From sequence record NC_041911.1: a stretch of 64,000 nt of DNA. One strand, written 5' to 3'. A program made the position numbers and the translations under genes. Under the pieces are notes generated by a model. That model was not told the DNA's origin. It did not search any database and was given only the letters and a program-made list of their open reading frames with translations. Shown piece by piece: positions 24,772-34,413 of the stretch (position 1 is the stretch's first letter; every line of letters starts with the position of its first letter).

Positions 24772-26426
24772 GATGTAGCCGCATCGATCGAAATATCACC
24801 AGGAGCGGTGATAGTGAATGGAACCAGCGTCGGGCCAGTAGCAGACGTGGTGAACGTCGTCTGAGACAGCGTCACGTTCGTCGACGGCGTCAGCGTCACG
24901 TTTGCAGCAACATAGTTACCATTCGCATCCGTTACGGAGACCGTCAGTGTACCGCTAGCCGGCGCGCCGCTGTACGAGTAGCTGCCGCTATCAAACGACA
25001 GGTTGATCGTGTTAGCGGTGCCAGTCGGGTTGATGTACCACAGCTCCCATTCACACATCGTTGCGGGCGTAGCCGAAATCGGGTTGATGTACCAGAAGCG
25101 ACCAGCGGAGTCAAAGCCATGCGACCAAGCACCGTAATACTGAGTAGCGCTGACACGACCCAGTGTAACAGTGTTGGTCTTATTCAGGACACCACCAGTA
25201 CCGACCGACCAGAACTCGTAGCGGTCATCGTAGGCAACCACAAAGTTCATGCCATTGTCGTCTGCCGTGGTCATCGAGCGCGGGCTCGGTGCCAAGTTAT
25301 ACGTGCCCACGTAAGTGGCTGTATTTTTGTCGGTCAGCTTGTACACGTACATTTTCTGCAATGCCGTCGTCGGAGTGGCAGCACTGTTTTCGAAGCCGAT
25401 CACCAGTAGATATTTGTTACCATCCGTGTGGTTGATCAGTTGTACACGCATCACACCGACTTGCGTCAGTGTCATTGGGTTTTGATCCAAGGTCACCAAG
25501 TTATTGGTGATCGCTGGTGTTGCGTCCAGGCTACTCATAGCTACGCGATGGATTTCCATCGCAGTAGCGGAGCGCCAGATCACGTAGGAACTTTTCTCGT
25601 TAGAGAGAGTATCCCAAGCAAAGGACGGAGCAGATTGCGCATAACCCATGCCGGTGCTAATGGTAGAGGCTCCCGCCGGTGCACCCAGCGAGGTCGAGTA
25701 GGCAATTGCTGCCAGCGTTGCTTTAGCAACGGCTCGAACCTCCATTGTAGCCTGAATCGCGCTGGCGCCAACATACGTGTCGACAAAATACCAACGATTG
25801 GTGTCTTCGCCGACACGATGCGCGGCGAACATGGGTCCCAGAGCCCTAGAGCCAAACAAAAGCGTTGTTTGGCCAGCAGTGGTAGTGCCAACAGGAAAGC
25901 TTTCAACGCTCGCAGACAGATACGAGTTGCTGTAGTGCCGAGTCATAGCAAGCCGGCCAGCATTCACCGATGGTAACCAAACAGCTTCATGGTTCCACAG
26001 AGAAGTCGTATAGGTACTCGCACTAGCCGGATTACTGACGTTGCCGGTATTCGGGTCCCAGTCGTAAACCATAGCCAAACCAGCGTCGGAGAAGTTCCGG
26101 ATATTGCCATTCGGCAACGTCTGATGGCAAATCTCCACGCCGTTCCAGCGACCGCAAAGCACCATATCGAAATCGCTTGCGATCTGGCCCGGCGAACCTC
26201 CAGCAACGTTTGGTGTCATTGGCTGATAACCGCGCATCATTCGAATAGTCCATGCGTTGTTATACGCCACCGGTGACATGCTCGATGTCATCGGAGCCGC
26301 AGGAGCGCCGATGACTTCACTCAGGTCACTTACCCGGTACACTTTGTTATCGATGTGCAGGTTATTACCCAACTGAACAGCGAGGCGGTTGGGGAACATG
26401 CCCCGATAAGTCTTAAGTTTAGGCAT
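24768..26426 (-). CDS. Large fibre/receptor-binding-like protein (paralog 1, more divergent)
   Basis: 552 aa; C-terminal SFDSGSYSYSGAP...GDISIDAATS matches paralogs 2 and 3. Confidence 0.75.
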   Translation of the reverse strand: MPKLKTYRGMFPNRLAVQLGNNLHIDNKVYRVSDLSEVIGAPAAPMTSSMSPVAYNNAWTIRMMRGYQPMTPNVAGGSPGQIASDFDMVLCGRWNGVEICHQTLPNGNIRNFSDAGLAMVYDWDPNTGNVSNPASASTYTTSLWNHEAVWLPSVNAGRLAMTRHYSNSYLSASVESFPVGTTTAGQTTLLFGSRALGPMFAAHRVGEDTNRWYFVDTYVGASAIQATMEVRAVAKATLAAIAYSTSLGAPAGASTISTGMGYAQSAPSFAWDTLSNEKSSYVIWRSATAMEIHRVAMSSLDATPAITNNLVTLDQNPMTLTQVGVMRVQLINHTDGNKYLLVIGFENSAATPTTALQKMYVYKLTDKNTATYVGTYNLAPSPRSMTTADDNGMNFVVAYDDRYEFWSVGTGGVLNKTNTVTLGRVSATQYYGAWSHGFDSAGRFWYINPISATPATMCEWELWYINPTGTANTINLSFDSGSYSYSGAPASGTLTVSVTDANGNYVAANVTLTPSTNVTLSQTTFTTSATGPTLVPFTITAPGDISIDAATS

Positions 26427-29400
26427 TAGTTGTACTCCAAAGTAATCAACATGTCGGAACCGCTGCTACCCACTACTTGGAGGGAAACATTGCTTCCGGC
26501 AGGGAGACTGTTAGTTTCAGCCACATACATGTTGGTTTGACCGGCTGCCAGTGTGAGCGAGATATTATCGCTCGTACCGTCGGCATGATGGACAACGGCA
26601 TTCACCACGAGGTCAGTGGTAGCTACCGTACCCAGCTGCAGCCGGATACCAGCCAAGGCATGGGCATCTGCAGGCGGATACCAATTCATCGGAATCGAAG
26701 TGGTCTGAGTGATCGGACCATCGAAGGCAGCGGTCTTCTGACGGGTGAGCGTCAGCGCAGACCAAGCACCATTCTGACGAACGTAAACACCGTTGTCCTT
26801 CGGTGCCTCCAGAACATCTACCGGAATCCAGTTACCATCCTTGCGAGCGTAGAGCACGTCGTCAAAGTTGGCATCGTAGACGTTACCACCACCAAGGTAA
26901 CCCAACGCGCTCCAGGCCACCGTAGAGGTTTTCTGGAAGAACTGCAGCGATGCCGAGTTGAGGAAGTAATCCCCTACAGTGCCGTCGGCAGCCGATGGGT
27001 TGCGGGACAGTACGATCCAGCGAGTGCCCGGATCACCCTTGACACCTTGTACGCCCTGAATACCCTGAGCGCCTTGAATACCTTGAATACCCTGCAAGCC
27101 ACGCACACCCTGCGGGCCTTGGATCGGACCAACATCGATGAATGCTGTACCTGTCCATGCCCAACCATGCAGAGTGTCCTGAGCAATGTACATATCGCCA
27201 GGATTGGTGGAGGTAGCAGGCAGGTTAGCACTGGTATTAACCGTACCCAAGATTTTTACACCAGGACCCATCGGACCTTGGTCACCTTGCGGACCCTGAG
27301 CACCAGCTGCGCCAGGATCGCCTTGTGGTCCCTGAGCACCAGTATCGCCCTTTACGCCCTGCAGGCCTTGGATACCTTGGTCACCCTTGTCACCCTTCCA
27401 CTGCCCGGCATCAAGCCAGCTGACACCGTTCCACACGAAGAGATGATCGCCTACGCGATAAGCATCGCCGATGTTGTTGGTGCCGCTGACAGGCAGGGAA
27501 TTTTGGTCAGGCAGAATACCAAGCACCTTGATGCTGTTACCGGTATCGCCCTTATCACCTTTGTCACCTTTATCGCCCTTCAGGCCCTGGATACCCTGAA
27601 TACCCTGGATACCTTGTAGACCTTGTGCACCAGTGTCGCCTTTATCGCCTTTGACACCCTGTAAACCCTGAGGACCTACCGGACCTTGAATGACACCCAT
27701 GTCCGTGTACTGTGTACCATCCCAGCCCCAGAAGTGGCCGCCAATCAAATAACCCTCACCCAGCGTACCGGTAGCCGGCAGTTGCGAGGTATCTGTGAGT
27801 GTGCCAACGATACTGATGCCGGGACCCATCGGACCCTGCACACCCTGCGGACCCTGGATACCTTGGTCCCCTTGAATACCCTGGATACCCTGATCGCCTT
27901 TGTCACCTTTAATACCCTGGATACCTTGAATACCCTGGATACCTTGGTCCCCTTGAGCACCACGGAACGGACCAGCGTTCGTCCAATCAGTGCCGAGGAA
28001 GATATAAAGGTCGGTGCCTACAATGTAAGCGTCTTCCTGCGCGGGATTGGCAGGTAGTGACGGAACGTCCGCCACGACACCTTTGATCGCCAAACCACGC
28101 CCCATCGGACCCTGAGGACCGATATCGCCCTTAGCACCGACCAGCGAATTCAGCCAAGAATTCAGGTCACCTACGTAGCCATTTTCAACAGCCACTTGGT
28201 AAGCCGTAAGGCCAGCCGTGCCTTGCAGCGAAGCGATCCACTGGTCAATAGTACCAGTGAAACCACCAGCGACGGCAATATCAAAGGCAGAAGCACCGGT
28301 GGTGCCGGTATCGCCTTTCAAGCCCTGCAGACCCTGCAGACCTTGAGGTCCAGTATCACCTTTCGGACCTTGTACCAAACCGCAATCAACGAAGGCGGTG
28401 CCGGTCCACGCCCAGCCGTGCAGTGTATCGAGGGCGATATACATATCGCCCGGATCAGTGGAGGTTGCCGGGAGATCCGTGCTGCTCGGAACCGTGCCAA
28501 GAATCTTGACGCCCGGACCCATATCGCCCTTGTCGCCTTTCAGGCCTTGGGGACCAACGGGACCAATCGGTCCAATCAGAGTAGCAAGCCAGTCGGTCTG
28601 CGAGCCGGTAAAGCCATTGGCGACTGCCACATCAAAAGCAGACTTACCAACCAGCGAAGCCAACCACGCAGTCTGACCGCCTACGAAACCATTCGCTTGC
28701 GCAATCTGGTACGAAGACTTACCTTGCAGCGAAGCGATCCACTGCGACAACGTCATCGATTGCGGGATCAGGCCAGCATCCTTGGCCAGTTGGTAAGCAG
28801 ACTTACCTGCCGGACCCACCTGACCCACCGGAACCCAGTTCGTAGCGTCCCACACCCACATCACCGAGTCGATGATATACGCGTCGCCCGGAGAGTTGTT
28901 CTGCGCCGGAAGATCGCTGGTGGATTGGAACGAACCCTGAACTTTCAGGCCGATACCATCTGCGCCATGCAGAGAAGCCAGCCAATCGGCTTCCGTACCG
29001 CCAAAACCAGCCAATTGTGCCAGTTCATAGGCACTCTTGCCTTCGGGACCTTGCAGGTTGCCGAGATTCACCCACTGACCGCCCGTCACAGCCCAGAATT
29101 GCGGCCCGATCAGATAGCAATCGCCTTCTTGCGACGTAGTAACGTCAGGCAATTGAGATTGATCGGCCACAGCACCAAGCAAACGAGCACCGTTACCGAT
29201 CGGACCTTGTGCTCCGGTGTCGCCTTTGTCACCTTTCGGGCCTTTGAGCGACGCCGACCACTCAGCTTCAGTACCCGTAAAGCCACCGGCAACAGCGATA
29301 TCGTAAGCCGATGGGCCAGTATCGCCTTTGACACCTTGGATACCCTGATCACCCGGGATACCTTGGATACCTTGGTCACCTTTATCGCCCTTGTCGCCCT

Positions 29401-29698
29401 TCAGGCTGGCGACCCAGTCTGCTTCAGTACCGACAAAGCCGAGAGCGACAGCAGCGTCGTAAGCGCTCTTGCCATCCAAAGAAGCCAGCCATTCAGCTTC
29501 GGTGCCTACGTAGCCGGCTTCAACAGCGACCTGATAGGCGCTCTTACCAGCTACGAACAGTTGATCCAGAGTGAACTTGACGTTCTTACCATCCTGGACT
29601 GCCTCCACCACTTCTGCACCAGTGATCGGTGCAGCAGGCGGCAGGTCGGTAATCCGATAATACAAGGAGGGATCGAGAGAATTGGGATCGCTCATCAT
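26426..29698 (-). CDS. Long collagen-like tail fibre
   Basis: Gly-X-Y runs (GDKGDQGIQGIQG), GKSAYxxA repeats, repeated G..LP..GD.Y..W.W.G..W modules. Confidence 0.9.
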   Translation of the reverse strand: MMSDPNSLDPSLYYRITDLPPAAPITGAEVVEAVQDGKNVKFTLDQLFVAGKSAYQVAVEAGYVGTEAEWLASLDGKSAYDAAVALGFVGTEADWVASLKGDKGDKGDQGIQGIPGDQGIQGVKGDTGPSAYDIAVAGGFTGTEAEWSASLKGPKGDKGDTGAQGPIGNGARLLGAVADQSQLPDVTTSQEGDCYLIGPQFWAVTGGQWVNLGNLQGPEGKSAYELAQLAGFGGTEADWLASLHGADGIGLKVQGSFQSTSDLPAQNNSPGDAYIIDSVMWVWDATNWVPVGQVGPAGKSAYQLAKDAGLIPQSMTLSQWIASLQGKSSYQIAQANGFVGGQTAWLASLVGKSAFDVAVANGFTGSQTDWLATLIGPIGPVGPQGLKGDKGDMGPGVKILGTVPSSTDLPATSTDPGDMYIALDTLHGWAWTGTAFVDCGLVQGPKGDTGPQGLQGLQGLKGDTGTTGASAFDIAVAGGFTGTIDQWIASLQGTAGLTAYQVAVENGYVGDLNSWLNSLVGAKGDIGPQGPMGRGLAIKGVVADVPSLPANPAQEDAYIVGTDLYIFLGTDWTNAGPFRGAQGDQGIQGIQGIQGIKGDKGDQGIQGIQGDQGIQGPQGVQGPMGPGISIVGTLTDTSQLPATGTLGEGYLIGGHFWGWDGTQYTDMGVIQGPVGPQGLQGVKGDKGDTGAQGLQGIQGIQGIQGLKGDKGDKGDKGDTGNSIKVLGILPDQNSLPVSGTNNIGDAYRVGDHLFVWNGVSWLDAGQWKGDKGDQGIQGLQGVKGDTGAQGPQGDPGAAGAQGPQGDQGPMGPGVKILGTVNTSANLPATSTNPGDMYIAQDTLHGWAWTGTAFIDVGPIQGPQGVRGLQGIQGIQGAQGIQGVQGVKGDPGTRWIVLSRNPSAADGTVGDYFLNSASLQFFQKTSTVAWSALGYLGGGNVYDANFDDVLYARKDGNWIPVDVLEAPKDNGVYVRQNGAWSALTLTRQKTAAFDGPITQTTSIPMNWYPPADAHALAGIRLQLGTVATTDLVVNAVVHHADGTSDNISLTLAAGQTNMYVAETNSLPAGSNVSLQVVGSSGSDMLITLEYN

Positions 29699-29708
29699 TT
29701 ATCCTTTA

Positions 29709-30257
29709 TTAAGAAATTGTGTTTTCGAGCACGCGAATGCGGAGATTCTGATCCGTCGGAATCTGACCATTTTCTCCACGTGCAGCCGGTAAAGGAGCAT
29801 TCGGAGTGTAGGGGAAGAAGTAATCCCCCGGTAGCCATGCAAGCGACGTATCGGTAATCGTTACGGTAATGCCGTTGATCGGCAGAGTGTCGAGCGGAGT
29901 GTCTTCTACCTCGGAGGTCACCAGATCCAGGCCGAGGCCGGCGTTGATCTGGGGCAGGATAGCGTGCACGGTTGTTGGGAAGGTGATGGGATCAAACGGA
30001 ACCAACTCCCCCGGGGGAAGACGTTTCAATGCATCGAAGCTCAGTCGCTTGTAATTGATGGCCAACGGTTCATCCTGGCGCGTCGTCGTGTATGCTTCGG
30101 CCTGCACCGTGGTAGAACCTTCAACGGGTGCAGAACCGAGTTCCGGCGCACCAAAATTGAAATTCACGGCGCTGGGAAGAACCGGCTGTTGCGCACTACG
30201 GATCAACTGTGACAGTCGCGCCTGGCTCGTGCCAGCATAGGGCTTGATACGAGACAT
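29709..30257 (-). CDS. Putative virion structural protein (fibre attachment)
   Basis: Directly upstream of fibre; start MSRIKPY. Confidence 0.65.
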   Translation of the reverse strand: MSRIKPYAGTSQARLSQLIRSAQQPVLPSAVNFNFGAPELGSAPVEGSTTVQAEAYTTTRQDEPLAINYKRLSFDALKRLPPGELVPFDPITFPTTVHAILPQINAGLGLDLVTSEVEDTPLDTLPINGITVTITDTSLAWLPGDYFFPYTPNAPLPAARGENGQIPTDQNLRIRVLENTIS

Positions 30258-30412: not shown

Positions 30413-31615
30413 TTAGAAGCCGAGGTCGATATCCCCACCGATGACTTCTTTCGACACGTTCTCAGTGGAGACCGTGTTGATAAGGTACTGGTTGTTGTCC
30501 TGTTCTTGCGGAGACGACTGTTTCTCGTTGATGTCGATCCAGTCGCGCATGTAGTTAAGCGGCAGTTGTTGCGGCATTTGCACGCCCAGTTCCATTTCCA
30601 CTTCAGCCAGCACACCGAAAGTCACACAAACGTGGCGACCGTTGAACAACGACCAGTCCTTCAGCTTTTGCGGAGTCACACCCGGCAGTTCATCGCCATC
30701 GCTGTGCAAATAGTCAACCCAGGACATTTCATTACGCAGCAGTTCGATCAACGCGCGAATGATGATCGGACGAACAGCCTGGAATGCAGCGCGACCCCAT
30801 TCGGTAGCCAACAGGTTACGAAGAACTTCTTCGCCATACGGCACATGGTTGTTGTACTCGTCGCGTGCGATCAACTGGATAGCCGAGCCAATCGGTTCGA
30901 ACAGGCCCAGTTCGCAGATACCGAAGGTCACCGCGAAGGAGGCCATGAACTGGATACGTTCCAGCATGTACACTGCCGCCACCAACAGCACCACGGCTTG
31001 TTCCATTTCCTTGGTGCGCTTGCGGGTGAGTTGCCATTCGAGGCAGGCGGCAGAAGCTTTCGCGAAGATTTCGCCGACCACCGCCATGCGGCCATGCGCT
31101 TCCCGCACCGACAGAATCTCGTTCAGTATTGCCGACGGATCTTCGAACGAACCACGCACGATCTCGGAGTAGGTCAGGGCATGCAGGTTTTCGTTATCTG
31201 CGATACGGACATAGCCGCAACGGATTTCGGTGGCGGTACAGAACGGCACCATCACTTCCGCCAGACCACGAGCAGCAACCGAGTCACCCTCCCACTGCCA
31301 TGCCAGCGTGCGGATCATCATCCGGTAGATCGATGGCGAGCAGGTCTTGAATTCCGGCATGCAACGCGAGTAATCAAACTCGTTATGCTTCCAGTCCATC
31401 GACTTCAGTTCTTCATAGAGACGGAAGATGTCCGGATACGGACGATGGATGGTATCGAGCAGGCCGCCGGGTTGGCCCAAGAACAGCTCGGGCTTTTCGT
31501 AGTCGGTCTTGTGAAGGTTGAAGATCGCCGGGTTCAGTGTTTCCCCGCGCTGAGCCAGCGAGAGGTTAATGTAGTCGACGGTTTCAAAGTTATGCGCTTG
31601 TACGAGTTCAGTCAT
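30413..31615 (-). CDS. nrdB: Ribonucleotide reductase class Ia beta subunit
   Basis: Iron ligands and radical Tyr: EGDS, ENLHALTY, LERIQF, RDEYNNH. Confidence 0.95.
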   Translation of the reverse strand: MTELVQAHNFETVDYINLSLAQRGETLNPAIFNLHKTDYEKPELFLGQPGGLLDTIHRPYPDIFRLYEELKSMDWKHNEFDYSRCMPEFKTCSPSIYRMMIRTLAWQWEGDSVAARGLAEVMVPFCTATEIRCGYVRIADNENLHALTYSEIVRGSFEDPSAILNEILSVREAHGRMAVVGEIFAKASAACLEWQLTRKRTKEMEQAVVLLVAAVYMLERIQFMASFAVTFGICELGLFEPIGSAIQLIARDEYNNHVPYGEEVLRNLLATEWGRAAFQAVRPIIIRALIELLRNEMSWVDYLHSDGDELPGVTPQKLKDWSLFNGRHVCVTFGVLAEVEMELGVQMPQQLPLNYMRDWIDINEKQSSPQEQDNNQYLINTVSTENVSKEVIGGDIDLGF

Positions 31616-31752
31616 TTTTGTTCACTAACGAGAGATGGAAAGAGGGGTGGATTCATTCAATACCAATGCCCGGTATTTTCTCATCTAAAGGAATTGGGAG
31701 CATAAACAGAGAGGAGGAAACCTCCTCTCTGCCTACACTTCTGTCTTACTGC

Positions 31753-34413
31753 TTACAGCTTGCAGGCGCCACCGCCACAAGCGTCTTCCTGCTCAGACTC
31801 GACGTACTCGACAGACGGCATCGTGTACAGCTTGATCCAGCTTTCACTGTTCCAAACGTACCAGGACTCACCGATCAAGTAGCTGTCACCGAAACGATCG
31901 CTTCCCTTCGGCAACATGCCTTCCTCTTTCACAGTGCCGCAGCAATGTACCAGGAACGTATCACCGAACAGTTCACGAGCTTTCACGAAGATCTCGTATG
32001 CTTCATCGCCCTCAGTACGGACGTAACCGCCGCTCTCATCCGTGCCGATAGCGGTCGGAATATTGAGAGCCGCAGTTTGCAGTCGACTGATCACCGCTTT
32101 AGTCTCGGTGTTCGCTTCGGCTTCCGTTGCAACGGCAGCTTCTGCTGCACCAGGAATGCTGGCCACCAGCGACACGGTCGCTTCCATCGACTTGACCTTC
32201 GGACGGAGTGAGTTGGTGTAATAACGACTCTTCATGCCCGATGCGATCATGTAAAGGAAACGTTCCACCACTTCCTTTTCCGTCACGGTCGTTTCGCCGG
32301 GAGCGAACTTCCGGTACTCGTCAGCCGAAATACCTTGGTCAGTCCATTTCTGGCCGAGCGCGTAGAGGTCGATCAGATCCTTGTAGTGCAGATCCCAGAC
32401 GGACTGGTAGGCGTCACCCAGCAGGTCACCATCCACAGCGGCCCAACGCAGGATGTTGTTTTCCCCGTCAGTCTTGGTGATCACCACCGAACGGATCGGA
32501 TAGATCGAGTTGGTGGAGCCAAGAGCCTTCGACGACGATTCACCCGGCATCATGGCCGACAACACGCTGTGAGCGATACCACCGTTCGCGATCAGCTCTT
32601 GCGACAGAGCATCCCAGTCATAGACGTTCTCGAACTTGCCGATCTTGTCCACATTACGGTTGTAAGTCTGCAGCGGAGTCCAACCTTCCGGCCACTTGGT
32701 CTTGTGAATCCACGGAGCCAGACCACGTTCCTTCGAGATCTTGATCGAAGCCTTGATCAGGAAGTACATGTGACGTTCGAAGATGCGGTGGATCTCAGCC
32801 TTGCCTTCCAGCGTATCGTAGCGCAGACCCTTACGAGCCATCCAGGTAGCCAGACCCATGATGCCCACGCCGGCATTCATGCGCTTGTGCGCGGTGAACT
32901 TGAGGTGCGGGAACGGGTACTCGCCGTTGAGGATCGTGTAGTCGATCATCTTCAGCGCGTAGTAGCAGGCGTCGAGGTACTCGTCGTCATCTTCACCGAT
33001 GTTCTCGATCGGAATCGCAGCCAGGTTACACATCGCGATTTCGCCGCGACCGTGATCTTCCTCGGTGTACAGATCGCGCATGTCGAAGTACGGTGCCTGG
33101 ATTTCAGCGATTTCCTGGCACAGGTTCATCGAGTGGATGCGGTGATCCGGCGAGATCTTGAACGGCGTATGACGGTTGATCTCGTGGATGTTCTGCACGT
33201 AGGCCGTGCCGGTATCGAACGCTTCAGCGTACGAGTGCAGCACCAGCTTACGCGCATTTACGTACTTCTTCGGGAACAGCGGGTTGTCTTCGTACTGCTT
33301 GTACAGTTCGACGAAACGCTTGATGTCCGGCGAGAAGAATGCATCGAACAGATCCGGTGCCGAAAACTCCGTGAAGGTGAAGATGTCTTCGCCTTTCTGG
33401 ACTTTGGCAGCGAACCACGGGTTTACCAGCATCGAGAAGTGCAGGTCACGCAGCTGCTTGTCTTCCGGCTGCATCGGGTTGCGATACTGCACGATGTCGA
33501 TCGCTTCCGGGTCGAAACCACTGAAGCTGGTCGTACCAGCGCCAGCGCGGGCCGCTTGCTTGTTCGCGATGGTCGCTGCCGCGTTGGCCTTCAGGTAGCG
33601 ATACTTACCACCGTGCATCACACGACCGCCAGCAATCGGATCACCCACGGTACGAGTCGAGATGAACGAGCCCAGACCAGCCGAGTTCACGGTCATCATG
33701 TACGCAATGTGGTCACCGATGGCCAGCGAGTTGGCATCGTCAGCCGCCGTGAAGATGCAGCACGATGCCCAGCCGTTGTGCGGCGTGCCCAGGTACAGGT
33801 AGTTCGGAGTCGGCGCCGACAGCTTCTTGCCGGAGAACTTGTCGTAGAACTTGCGCAACACCTGCATACGGACGGATGGGTCTTCATTTTCCGCCAGCGT
33901 CATTGCCATGCGCATATACAGGTGCTGCGGCGTCTCGAAGACCTCGCCAGTCACGTGGTTGCGGATCGCGTACTTGTCACGGATCTGCTTGAGTGCAAAT
34001 TCCGGATAGAAGAAATCCTTGTTGTGATCGATGAGGGATTCGATCTCGGCGTATTCCTCTTTGGAATACTGGAGCGGACGCATCAGCGTCAGCCCTTCCA
34101 GCTTTTTGTGCTGGTCAAACACCGACGGCGGGTTAATACTGCCGTAAATGTCCTTGCGATACACAGTCGCAAACAGGCGCCCGGCCATCAGGTAGGCCGG
34201 CCAGGTCCGAATTGCCAACAGTTCTTCGATCAGGACGAGCATCAGCTCGCGAGTGGTGGCCTTTTCAGGCAGTTTTGCAACAGCAGCGAGAGCAGCTTGA
34301 GACCAGTCCACACGACCTTGGAGGTGATTGGCGGCCCATTCTCCCCAGCCATTGAGTTTTGCAGGGATCAGGGGCTCTTCGGAGCCATTCCGTTTGATGA
34401 GAGTTTGCAACAT
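31753..34413 (-). CDS. nrdA: Ribonucleotide reductase class Ia alpha subunit with extended C-tail
   Basis: SAPTP, SCC, NLCQEI, MCNLA, MPGESSS, YY, terminal CGGGAC. Confidence 0.97.
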   Translation of the reverse strand: MLQTLIKRNGSEEPLIPAKLNGWGEWAANHLQGRVDWSQAALAAVAKLPEKATTRELMLVLIEELLAIRTWPAYLMAGRLFATVYRKDIYGSINPPSVFDQHKKLEGLTLMRPLQYSKEEYAEIESLIDHNKDFFYPEFALKQIRDKYAIRNHVTGEVFETPQHLYMRMAMTLAENEDPSVRMQVLRKFYDKFSGKKLSAPTPNYLYLGTPHNGWASCCIFTAADDANSLAIGDHIAYMMTVNSAGLGSFISTRTVGDPIAGGRVMHGGKYRYLKANAAATIANKQAARAGAGTTSFSGFDPEAIDIVQYRNPMQPEDKQLRDLHFSMLVNPWFAAKVQKGEDIFTFTEFSAPDLFDAFFSPDIKRFVELYKQYEDNPLFPKKYVNARKLVLHSYAEAFDTGTAYVQNIHEINRHTPFKISPDHRIHSMNLCQEIAEIQAPYFDMRDLYTEEDHGRGEIAMCNLAAIPIENIGEDDDEYLDACYYALKMIDYTILNGEYPFPHLKFTAHKRMNAGVGIMGLATWMARKGLRYDTLEGKAEIHRIFERHMYFLIKASIKISKERGLAPWIHKTKWPEGWTPLQTYNRNVDKIGKFENVYDWDALSQELIANGGIAHSVLSAMMPGESSSKALGSTNSIYPIRSVVITKTDGENNILRWAAVDGDLLGDAYQSVWDLHYKDLIDLYALGQKWTDQGISADEYRKFAPGETTVTEKEVVERFLYMIASGMKSRYYTNSLRPKVKSMEATVSLVASIPGAAEAAVATEAEANTETKAVISRLQTAALNIPTAIGTDESGGYVRTEGDEAYEIFVKARELFGDTFLVHCCGTVKEEGMLPKGSDRFGDSYLIGESWYVWNSESWIKLYTMPSVEYVESEQEDACGGGACKL

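What the first reader, a model, noticed from the sequence alone, without database searches (positions are those of the whole stretch)
31790..32200. Tail-fibre repeat module inserted in the NrdA C-terminal tail
Between the YY motif and the terminal CGGGAC redox pair lie about 125 extra aa. They include VHCCGTVKEEGMLPKGSDRFGDSYLIGESWYVWNSESWIKL (about 31828-31956). This matches the repeat in this phage's own fibre, e.g. IKVLGILPDQNSLPVSGTNNIGDAYRVGDHLFVWNGVSWLDAG and ISIVGTLTDTSQLPATGTLGEGYLIGGHFWGWDGTQYTDMG. In class Ia RNR this tail is a flexible arm that re-reduces the active site. A fibre module here could oligomerise or localise the enzyme, and it adds a CC pair.
Basis: partly seen in the sequence, partly recalled or inferred. 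Interest (0 to 1): 0.7.

Follow-up and report, generated by a model that had tools for sequence, protein, structure and literature searches.

The report
Fibre bead domain in phage RNR tail
A jumbo phage's ribonucleotide reductase carries, inside its normally floppy C-terminal redox arm, one folded copy of a small domain otherwise found as beads in collagen-like phage tail fibres; the copy is real, conserved and swapped between related phages, but its job is unknown.

Summary
The window is Ralstonia jumbo phage RP12 (phiKZ-related, with nuclear shell and PhuZ genes). NrdA (31753-34413, minus strand, 886 aa) has 154 aa after the YY dyad, against 30 in E. coli and 34 in phiKZ. Residues 821-866 are a true homologue of the 46-aa module repeated seven times in the fibre gene 2 kb downstream. 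Support comes from a fibre-only HMM (E 4.5e-7), a profile-profile comparison (97.9%, E 4.9e-13), a reciprocal HMM search, and a search of 1.84 billion proteins that returns multi-module collagen fibres. AlphaFold gives a confident helix plus four-strand mini-domain, and Foldseek returns phage tail fibres, RP12's own included.

New context changes the picture. Long tails (56-196 aa) are common among related NrdAs, and only a subset carries the module. The module is under purifying selection (dN/dS about 0.1). One NrdA (P0058) has a core 90% identical to a module-less relative but a distal tail like RP12's, so the cassette has been exchanged. The CC pair is not conserved. The module is not a recent copy of RP12's own fibre.

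The function is inferred, not shown: most likely a protein-docking domain on the redox arm.

The parts
31753..34413 (-). nrdA, class Ia ribonucleotide reductase alpha subunit, 886 aa (RP12 ORF156)
   Evidence: PF02867 (1e-78) and PF00317. TIGR02506 scores 369 bits, above its cutoff of 341. E. coli R1 structures match at E 1e-105. 100% identical to the RP12 record.
32218..34413 (-). Catalytic body, aa 1-732, ending in the Y731/Y732 radical-transfer dyad (32218-32223)
   Evidence: The alignment to E. coli R1 covers aa 5-736. Active-site Cys, Asn and Glu positions and YY are aligned. dN/dS is 0.07-0.15 between lineages.
32149..32217 (-). Proximal tail, aa 733-755. Conserved among relatives and predicted flexible.
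   Evidence: 70-88% identity between lineages over aa 733-765. pLDDT 59-62.
32065..32148 (-). Ala/Glu-rich long helix, aa 756-783 (predicted spacer)
   Evidence: AlphaFold helix at model residues 24-51, pLDDT 72-81.
32005..32064 (-). Variable, indel-rich linker, aa 784-803, predicted disordered
   Evidence: pLDDT 47-52. About 20% identity and 14-41 gap columns between lineages over aa 766-805.
31966..32004 (-). NrdA-specific helix, aa 804-816, preceding the module. It is part of the conserved cassette.
   Evidence: Predicted as a helix in both models, pLDDT 86-92. F809, A812 and F816 are invariant in 5 lineages. Fibre modules have no such helix.
31816..31953 (-). Fibre-type bead module, aa 821-866. 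Four predicted strands at aa 823-828, 843-847, 850-854 and 859-864.
   Evidence: Fibre-only HMM 25.4 bits, E 4.5e-7. hhalign 97.9%. pLDDT 92-95. Foldseek against BFVD returns collagen-like tail fibres, RP12's own fibre included. dN/dS about 0.10, with no indel in the four lineages compared codon by codon and only one 1-aa and one 2-aa insertion among all eight module-bearing lineages.
31939..31944 (-). C824-C825 pair inside the first strand of the module (specific to RP12/RP31)
   Evidence: No other module-bearing NrdA sequence has a cysteine at either position.
31756..31815 (-). Flexible acidic end, aa 867-886, with the redox pair C879/C884 (31762-31779)
   Evidence: 95% identity between lineages. 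pLDDT 52-59. All 83 relatives examined end in a Cys pair.
31706..31733 (-). Terminator-like hairpin between nrdA and nrdB
   Evidence: Consensus scan: 2 sites found against 0.4 expected.
30413..31615 (-). nrdB, class Ia beta subunit (RP12 ORF155)
   Evidence: Annotation. PF00268 on the orthologues in all related loci.
29709..30257 (-). ORF154, DUF7941 / PHROG 20090 protein, always directly upstream of the fibre gene
26426..29698 (-). Collagen-like tail fibre (RP12 ORF153, 1090 aa) with seven bead modules at 29054-29191, 28814-28951, 28373-28513, 27962-28096, 27686-27820, 27398-27535 and 27119-27262
   Evidence: Collagen PF01391 at 3.6e-34. PHROG 3904 'tail fiber' at 9e-301. Seven HMM domains of 59-73 bits. 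Detected in RP31 virions by mass spectrometry (PMC5468394 Table S3).

Best explanation
Shown. RP12 NrdA is an intact class Ia RNR alpha subunit. Its C-terminal redox arm has been lengthened and carries one domesticated copy of the roughly 46-aa bead module of collagen-like phage tail fibres. An NrdA-specific helix is fused in front of the module. The pair is predicted to fold as a compact helix plus four-strand mini-domain. This domain hangs on a helical and disordered spacer of about 70 aa. It sits only 12 residues upstream of the C879/C884 pair, which remains on a flexible acidic end. The cassette is kept by purifying selection and has moved between diverged nrdA genes by recombination.

Inferred. 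The arm still shuttles reducing equivalents into the active site. The mini-domain most likely works as a protein-docking element that parks the end of the arm on a protein surface. Candidate surfaces, in my order of likelihood, are the alpha2 body of the same or a neighbouring enzyme, the incoming reductant, or other copies of itself, as three modules meet in a fibre bead. In related NrdAs the same position is taken by short linear motifs, which would be alternative docking elements.

Origin (inferred). The module was captured from a collagen-like fibre gene, plausibly the one that lies two genes downstream in this lineage, long enough ago that no DNA similarity remains.
For: Identity of the module:
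- Fibre-only HMM hits NrdA at E 4.5e-7. The NrdA-only HMM hits the fibre at 3e-27 and nothing else in 280 kb. hhalign gives 97.9%.
- phmmer with NrdA aa 801-886 against 1.84 billion proteins gives 54 hits. About 48 are 2-15-module proteins with collagen GXY runs, and 2 are NrdA C-terminal fragments.
- AlphaFold gives pLDDT 88-95 over the helix plus module. Foldseek against BFVD gives probability 1.0 to phage tail fibres, including RP12's.

Intact enzyme and arm. All 83 relatives end in a Cys pair.

Selection: dN/dS is about 0.10 in the module, against 0.3-0.5 plus many indels in the linker. 15 columns are invariant across 5 lineages.

Exchange: P0058 is 90% identical to module-less P0062 in the core and 75% in the proximal tail. 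Its distal 85 aa are 33% identical to P0062 but 64-66% identical to RP12 and P0002. Module-bearing cores are not monophyletic in 200 of 200 bootstraps.

Alternative cassettes: of 46 long tails, 7 carry the module, 10 a Leu/Asp-rich motif and 6 the string VRLGRR.

Neighbourhood: all module-bearing loci have a fibre with 6-7 modules 2-2.5 kb downstream (the P0002 contig L004 ends inside its fibre, which shows three).

Established knowledge: class I tails re-reduce the active site (stated in PMC9669993). A docking of the yeast R1 C-terminal region on the neighbouring subunit is recalled from the literature and was not checked here.
Against: No experiment or multimer model bears on any binding partner, so the docking role is pure inference. 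The models came from a 14-sequence alignment and as monomers. I could not see coordinates, so helix-sheet packing is assumed from confidence values alone. Purifying selection on a folded insert could merely prevent misfolding. phiKZ and many relatives do well with short tails, so the cassette is dispensable for RNR chemistry. Two module-less relatives also have module-bearing fibres nearby, so neighbourhood alone does not explain the capture. Other phages' fibre modules are closer to the NrdA type than RP12's own, so the donor may have been foreign.
Confidence: 0.5

Rival explanations
1. Tolerated passenger. A fibre module landed in a disordered arm that accepts insertions. It folds, does nothing useful, and is conserved only because a misfolding insert would poison an essential enzyme.
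For: Tails in this clade vary freely from 56 to 196 aa and most have no recognisable element (26 of 46). phiKZ manages with 34 aa. No partner is known.
Against: dN/dS is about 0.1, as low as in the catalytic core. Surface positions are invariant as well as core ones. The extra helix is conserved with the module. The cassette was acquired or retained across a recombination event in P0058. A useless insert would be expected to be lost in some members of the module-bearing clade, and none of the lineages sampled has lost it.
Confidence: 0.25
2. Self-assembly. As in fibres, three modules come together, so the tails cross-link alpha2 dimers into higher-order RNR assemblies.
For: In fibres the module always lies between collagen triple-helix runs, so three copies must meet. 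Foldseek gave weak, non-significant similarity to a collagen trimerisation domain (9bnb, E 1.9).
Against: In fibres trimerisation may be driven by the collagen runs, not the bead. The NrdA version has lost the Gly that leads back into collagen and gained a helix that may cover the former interface. AlphaFold folds it confidently as a monomer.
Confidence: 0.15
3. Extra redox centre. The C824-C825 pair adds a redox relay to the arm.
For: Two adjacent cysteines lie in the arm of an enzyme that works by disulfide exchange.
Against: The pair is present only in RP12/RP31. The seven other module-bearing NrdA sequences have no cysteine there. It lies in a predicted buried strand.
Confidence: 0.03
4. 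Virion targeting. The module lets NrdA co-assemble with fibre chains or be carried on the particle.
For: NrdA shares a module with a confirmed virion protein encoded two genes away.
Against: The RP31 virion mass-spectrometry table lists the fibre (ORF150) but not NrdA (ORF153) among 32 proteins (PMC5468394). That survey was gel-band based and of limited depth.
Confidence: 0.04
5. Chance resemblance, or an artefact of assembly or annotation.
For: The module is short (46 aa) and only 20-27% identical to RP12's own fibre modules.
Against: Reciprocal HMMs, hhalign, the database search and the fold search all agree. The same architecture, ending in the Cys pair, occurs in eight independent sequences from isolates and metagenomes.
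Confidence: 0.01

Closest known systems
E. coli-type class Ia NrdA C-terminal tail (disordered redox arm)
   Same: It follows the YY dyad, ends in a Cys-x4-Cys pair two residues from the C-terminus, and the last 20 aa are predicted flexible.
   Different: It is 154 aa instead of 30, and contains a predicted long helix and a confidently folded mini-domain. Class I tails are described as disordered (PMC9669993).
Bead modules of collagen-like phage tail fibres (PHROG 3904 and 15437; RP12 ORF153). No Pfam or NCBIfam model exists.
   Same: Same sequence family and same predicted fold. The conserved Gly, Leu-Pro, Gly-Asp-x-Tyr and two Trp positions are all kept.
   Different: It is a single copy with no flanking Gly-X-Y runs. 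The terminal Gly is replaced, an extra N-terminal helix is added, and it sits in a cytoplasmic enzyme.
Folded domains in class II RNR C-terminal extensions (IscU-like and zinc-finger; Burnim et al. 2022, PMC9669993)
   Same: A folded domain within an RNR C-terminal extension, upstream of or around the reducing cysteines.
   Different: A different RNR class and different folds. Nothing of this kind is reported there for class I.
Yeast Rnr1 long C-terminal region (888-aa chains in the PDB list)
   Same: A class Ia alpha subunit with a tail about 100 aa longer than usual that still ends in the reducing pair. From my own knowledge it docks on the neighbouring subunit.
   Different: It is eukaryotic, unrelated in sequence, and has no fibre module. 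The resemblance is functional only and was not tested here.
Long-tailed NrdAs of related jumbo phages (P0060-P0084)
   Same: Same core (57-90% identical), same tail start and same acidic Cys-pair end.
   Different: The distal cassette is a short linear motif or nothing recognisable instead of the helix plus module.

Membership tests
Class Ia RNR alpha subunit (NrdA) | Ten-stranded barrel domain and all-alpha domain | tested here: met
   PF02867 at 1e-78 and PF00317 at 5e-16. TIGR02506 above its cutoff.
Class Ia RNR alpha subunit (NrdA) | Active-site cysteines, Asn and Glu, and the YY radical-transfer dyad | tested here: met
   Aligned residue by residue with E. coli R1. YY is at 731/732.
Class Ia RNR alpha subunit (NrdA) | C-terminal reducing Cys pair | tested here: met
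   C879-x4-C884 followed by KL. The same kind of ending occurs in 83 of 83 relatives.
Class Ia RNR alpha subunit (NrdA) | Partner ferritin-like beta subunit | tested here: met
   nrdB lies directly downstream. PF00268 on the orthologues.
Class Ia RNR alpha subunit (NrdA) | N-terminal ATP-cone | tested here: inconclusive
   The N-terminus aligns with the E. coli cone region, but PF03477 is not detected. More distant relatives do have it.
Collagen-fibre bead module (unnamed; within PHROG 3904 and 15437) | Profile match over the whole 46-aa unit with the conserved positions kept | tested here: met
Collagen-fibre bead module (unnamed; within PHROG 3904 and 15437) | Same predicted fold as the modules in fibre proteins | tested here: met
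   Foldseek against BFVD: 8 hits at E<=1e-3, most named hits tail-fibre or collagen-repeat proteins, RP12's fibre at 8e-4. These are predicted structures, not solved ones.
Collagen-fibre bead module (unnamed; within PHROG 3904 and 15437) | Flanked by Gly-X-Y triple-helix runs, in several copies per chain | tested here: not met
   NrdA has one copy and no GXY run. So it is a homologue of the module, not a fibre protein.
Collagen trimerisation domains (e.g. collagen XVIII) | Significant fold similarity | tested here: not met
   9bnb at E 1.9, TM 0.35-0.48.
DUF2793 / JBD30 receptor-binding protein | Significant sequence or fold similarity | tested here: not met
   Profile E 0.25 over 16 residues. 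Foldseek E 1.5. No Pfam hit.
Class II-type RNR tail domains (IscU-like, zinc finger) | Four-Cys zinc site or IscU-like fold in the tail | tested here: not met
   No Pfam or NCBIfam hit in the tail. The only tail cysteines are C824/C825 and C879/C884.

The most novel reading that the evidence does not exclude
The C-terminal redox arm of class Ia RNRs in RP12-like jumbo phages is a modular docking platform. Interchangeable distal cassettes are swapped by recombination: the fibre-derived mini-domain, a Leu/Asp-rich motif, and a VRLGRR-containing motif. Each would recruit the enzyme to a specific partner or assembly in the infected cell, or make it self-assemble. That would be a layer of RNR organisation or regulation not known for class I enzymes.
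Probability: 0.2. Interest if true: 0.75.

Novelty: new variant of a known kind. Interest (0 to 1): 0.55.

Why it matters
Class I RNR tails are treated as featureless disordered arms. Here a virion structural module has been taken over by a core metabolic enzyme, at the business end of that arm, and has been kept and exchanged among phages. This is a clean example of a domain moving from a structural protein into an enzyme. It also offers a handle on what the tail touches during re-reduction, and it suggests that jumbo-phage RNRs have lineage-specific partners. If it were only a tolerated passenger, it would still show how much cargo the redox arm can carry.

Tried and rejected
Pfam, NCBIfam and PDB sequence searches with the module and the tail found no curated family and no solved structure.

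The weak DUF2793/JBD30 lead (E 0.25) was followed into the paper and the fold search and then dropped.

blastn between the nrdA tail and the rest of the window found only chance 12-27-nt matches, and base composition is unremarkable. So there is no recent duplication.

A tblastn hit in Rhizobium phage RHph_I1_6 lies over a tRNA region with no ORF and is spurious. The Phosso hit is another collagen fibre.

Scans of IMG/VR and JGI metagenome contigs with the tail alignment added no new lineages.

The word-indexed search restricted to the tail found only one relative. Widening the region to aa 600-886 was what revealed the clade.

A GYF_2 match to one collagen protein (P0032) was not shared by the NrdA or RP12 modules.

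Full report
WHERE WE ARE. The window is 100% identical to Ralstonia phage RP12 and covers record positions 124001-188000. RP12 is a 280-kb phiKZ-related jumbo phage. Its record annotates a nuclear shell protein and a PhuZ tubulin. On the minus strand the genes run nrdA (31753-34413), nrdB (30413-31615), a DUF7941 protein (29709-30257), and a 1090-aa collagen-like tail fibre (26426-29698).

THE OBSERVATION. NrdA is a complete class Ia alpha subunit.
- The barrel and all-alpha domains are present, and TIGR02506 scores above its cutoff. A residue-by-residue alignment to E. coli R1 places YY at 731/732.
- The chain ends in C879-x4-C884-KL.
- After YY there are 154 aa, against 30 in E. coli and 34 in phiKZ.
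- The fibre has seven copies of a 46-aa module between Gly-X-Y runs.

IS THE LIKENESS REAL? Five independent tests say yes.
- An HMM built only from 13 fibre modules (RP12 and FLC1-1B) scores NrdA aa 825-860 at 25.4 bits, E 4.5e-7. The next six-frame piece of the window scores 4.9 bits.
- In the whole RP12 genome (3413 pieces) the module occurs only in that fibre and in NrdA. An HMM built only from five NrdA modules finds the fibre at 3e-27 and nothing else.
- Profile against profile gives 97.9% probability, E 4.9e-13, over 41 columns.
- phmmer with NrdA aa 801-886 against 1.84 billion representative proteins gave 54 hits. About 48 are proteins with 2-15 modules and collagen runs, with E down to 4e-38. 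Two are C-terminal NrdA fragments.
- PHROG tail-fibre families hit the same residues weakly.

STRUCTURE. AlphaFold2 on aa 801-886, with a 14-sequence alignment, gave mean pLDDT 81.5.
- Model residues 11-60 score 88-95. They form a helix (aa 804-816) and four strands (aa 823-828, 843-847, 850-854, 859-864).
- The last 20 aa, carrying the Cys pair, score about 52-55.
- A second model of aa 733-886 adds a flexible start, a long Ala/Glu-rich helix (aa 756-783, pLDDT 72-81) and a disordered stretch (aa 784-803).
- Foldseek found nothing significant in the PDB (best E 0.86).
- In BFVD it found eight hits at E<=1e-3 with probability 1.0. Most named hits are tail-fibre or collagen-repeat proteins, and RP12's own fibre is among them.
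- These are monomer predictions. I had no access to coordinates.

CONSERVATION. The same tail architecture is found in FLC1-1B and FLC4-3B, in an IMG/VR contig (P0002), in P0057, P0058 and P0059, and in the fragments P0006 and P0007.
- Between lineages the module has dN/dS of about 0.10, like the catalytic core (0.07-0.15).
- In the four lineages compared codon by codon the module has no indel. Among all eight lineages it has only one 1-aa and one 2-aa insertion.
- The linker (aa 766-805) is about 20% identical with 14-41 gap columns.
- Fifteen module columns are invariant in five lineages.
- The preceding helix (F809, A812, F816) and the acidic Cys-pair end are also invariant.
- The C824-C825 pair exists only in RP12/RP31.

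CONTEXT THAT CHANGES THE PICTURE. A search with aa 600-886 returned 90 NrdA relatives.
- Of 83 with a recognisable YY, 37 have tails of 50 aa or less and 46 have tails of 56-196 aa. All end in a Cys pair. A long tail is therefore a common trait of this neighbourhood, which includes many contigs of 100-300 kb.
- Only 7 of the long tails carry the module. Ten carry a Leu/Asp-rich motif and six the string VRLGRR.
- On a tree of the cores, RP12, P0057, P0059, P0002 and FLC1-1B form one clade. Module-bearing P0058 sits among module-less sequences, and monophyly of the module-bearing set was found in 0 of 200 bootstraps.
- P0058 is 90% identical to module-less P0062 in the core and 75% in the proximal tail. 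Its distal 85 aa are 33% identical to P0062 but 64-66% identical to RP12 and P0002.
- So the distal cassette (helix, module and Cys end) has been exchanged by recombination, or replaced in the P0062 line.

ORIGIN.
- There is no DNA similarity between the nrdA tail and the fibre gene.
- The NrdA module is 20-27% identical to RP12's fibre modules, which are 29-79% identical to one another.
- Fifty modules from other fibres score higher against the NrdA profile than RP12's best module does (45 against 23 bits).
- All module-bearing loci have a fibre with 6-7 modules 2-2.5 kb downstream; the one exception, contig L004, ends inside its fibre and shows three. Two module-less relatives have such a fibre too, and two do not.
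- Capture from a neighbouring fibre gene long ago is plausible. A foreign donor is not excluded.

FUNCTION (INFERRED). The enzyme and its shuttle look intact. The mini-domain lies 12 residues before C879, so it must come close to the active-site entrance whenever the pair enters.
- It is under selection and it travels as a cassette. In relatives its place is taken by short linear motifs.
- I therefore favour a docking role for the end of the arm. The partner could be the enzyme body, the reductant or itself.
- The main rival is a folded passenger that is merely tolerated.
- The CC pair as a redox centre is contradicted by its distribution.
- Virion targeting is unsupported. The RP31 virion table lists the fibre but not NrdA (PMC5468394).

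LITERATURE. Neither the RP12 paper nor the FLC1-1B paper mentions the tail. The survey of RNR extensions describes class I tails as disordered and reports folded tail domains only for class II (PMC9669993). I found no report of this feature, but the searchable library is incomplete.

Noticed in passing
Relatives P0058, P0061, P0062, P0064, P0067, P0069 (VRLGRR string); P0061-63, P0065, P0066, P0070, P0071, P0079, P0083, P0084 (Leu/Asp-rich motif): Module-less long NrdA tails carry other recurrent short motifs at fixed places. P0058 has both VRLGRR and the module. These may be linear docking motifs.
   Followed up: partly
window 26426-29698 (fibre), mainly its N-terminal half: Besides the 46-aa module and the collagen runs, the fibre holds a second repeat of about 26 aa. 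Units starting KSAY occur back to back from about aa 50 and again later. The same unit opens the metagenomic protein P0054.
   Followed up: no
window 31706-31733 (-): A terminator-like GC-rich hairpin lies between the nrdA stop and the nrdB start.
   Followed up: partly
window 29709-30257 (-) and the orthologues in L004, L022, L023, L026, L027: A DUF7941 / PHROG 20090 protein of about 180 aa always sits directly upstream of the collagen fibre gene, and twice in L023 and L027. It is a candidate fibre partner or attachment protein.
   Followed up: no
window 34100-34413 (NrdA N-terminus): The first roughly 100 aa align with the E. coli ATP-cone region, but the Pfam ATP-cone model does not hit. 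More distant relatives (P0094-P0143) keep PF03477. The cone may be degenerate in this clade.
   Followed up: no
L023 (contig of P0058), downstream of nrdA: nrdB is called as two pieces (164 and 226 aa), so it has one break in that contig. The kind of break was not examined.
   Followed up: no
L012 / L019 (contig of P0006): The nrdA gene call starts in the middle of the protein although 470 nt of contig lie upstream, and there is a partial reverse-strand gene at the contig end. nrdA may be interrupted there.
   Followed up: no
Relatives P0063, P0071, P0080, P0081, P0098, P0102, P0113, P0116, P0127, P0142: Several related NrdAs of 900-1320 aa carry intein or homing-endonuclease Pfam domains (PF14528, PF14890, PF13392, PF13403) in the body of the enzyme.
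   Followed up: no
window 26700-26900 (fibre aa about 935-985); L010 1751-4123: The fibre's C-terminal region has a weak Fibritin_C hit (E 0.017). It also has a stretch resembling a looser variant of the module, and a similar stretch opens the collagen fibre of Sinorhizobium phage Phosso.
   Followed up: no
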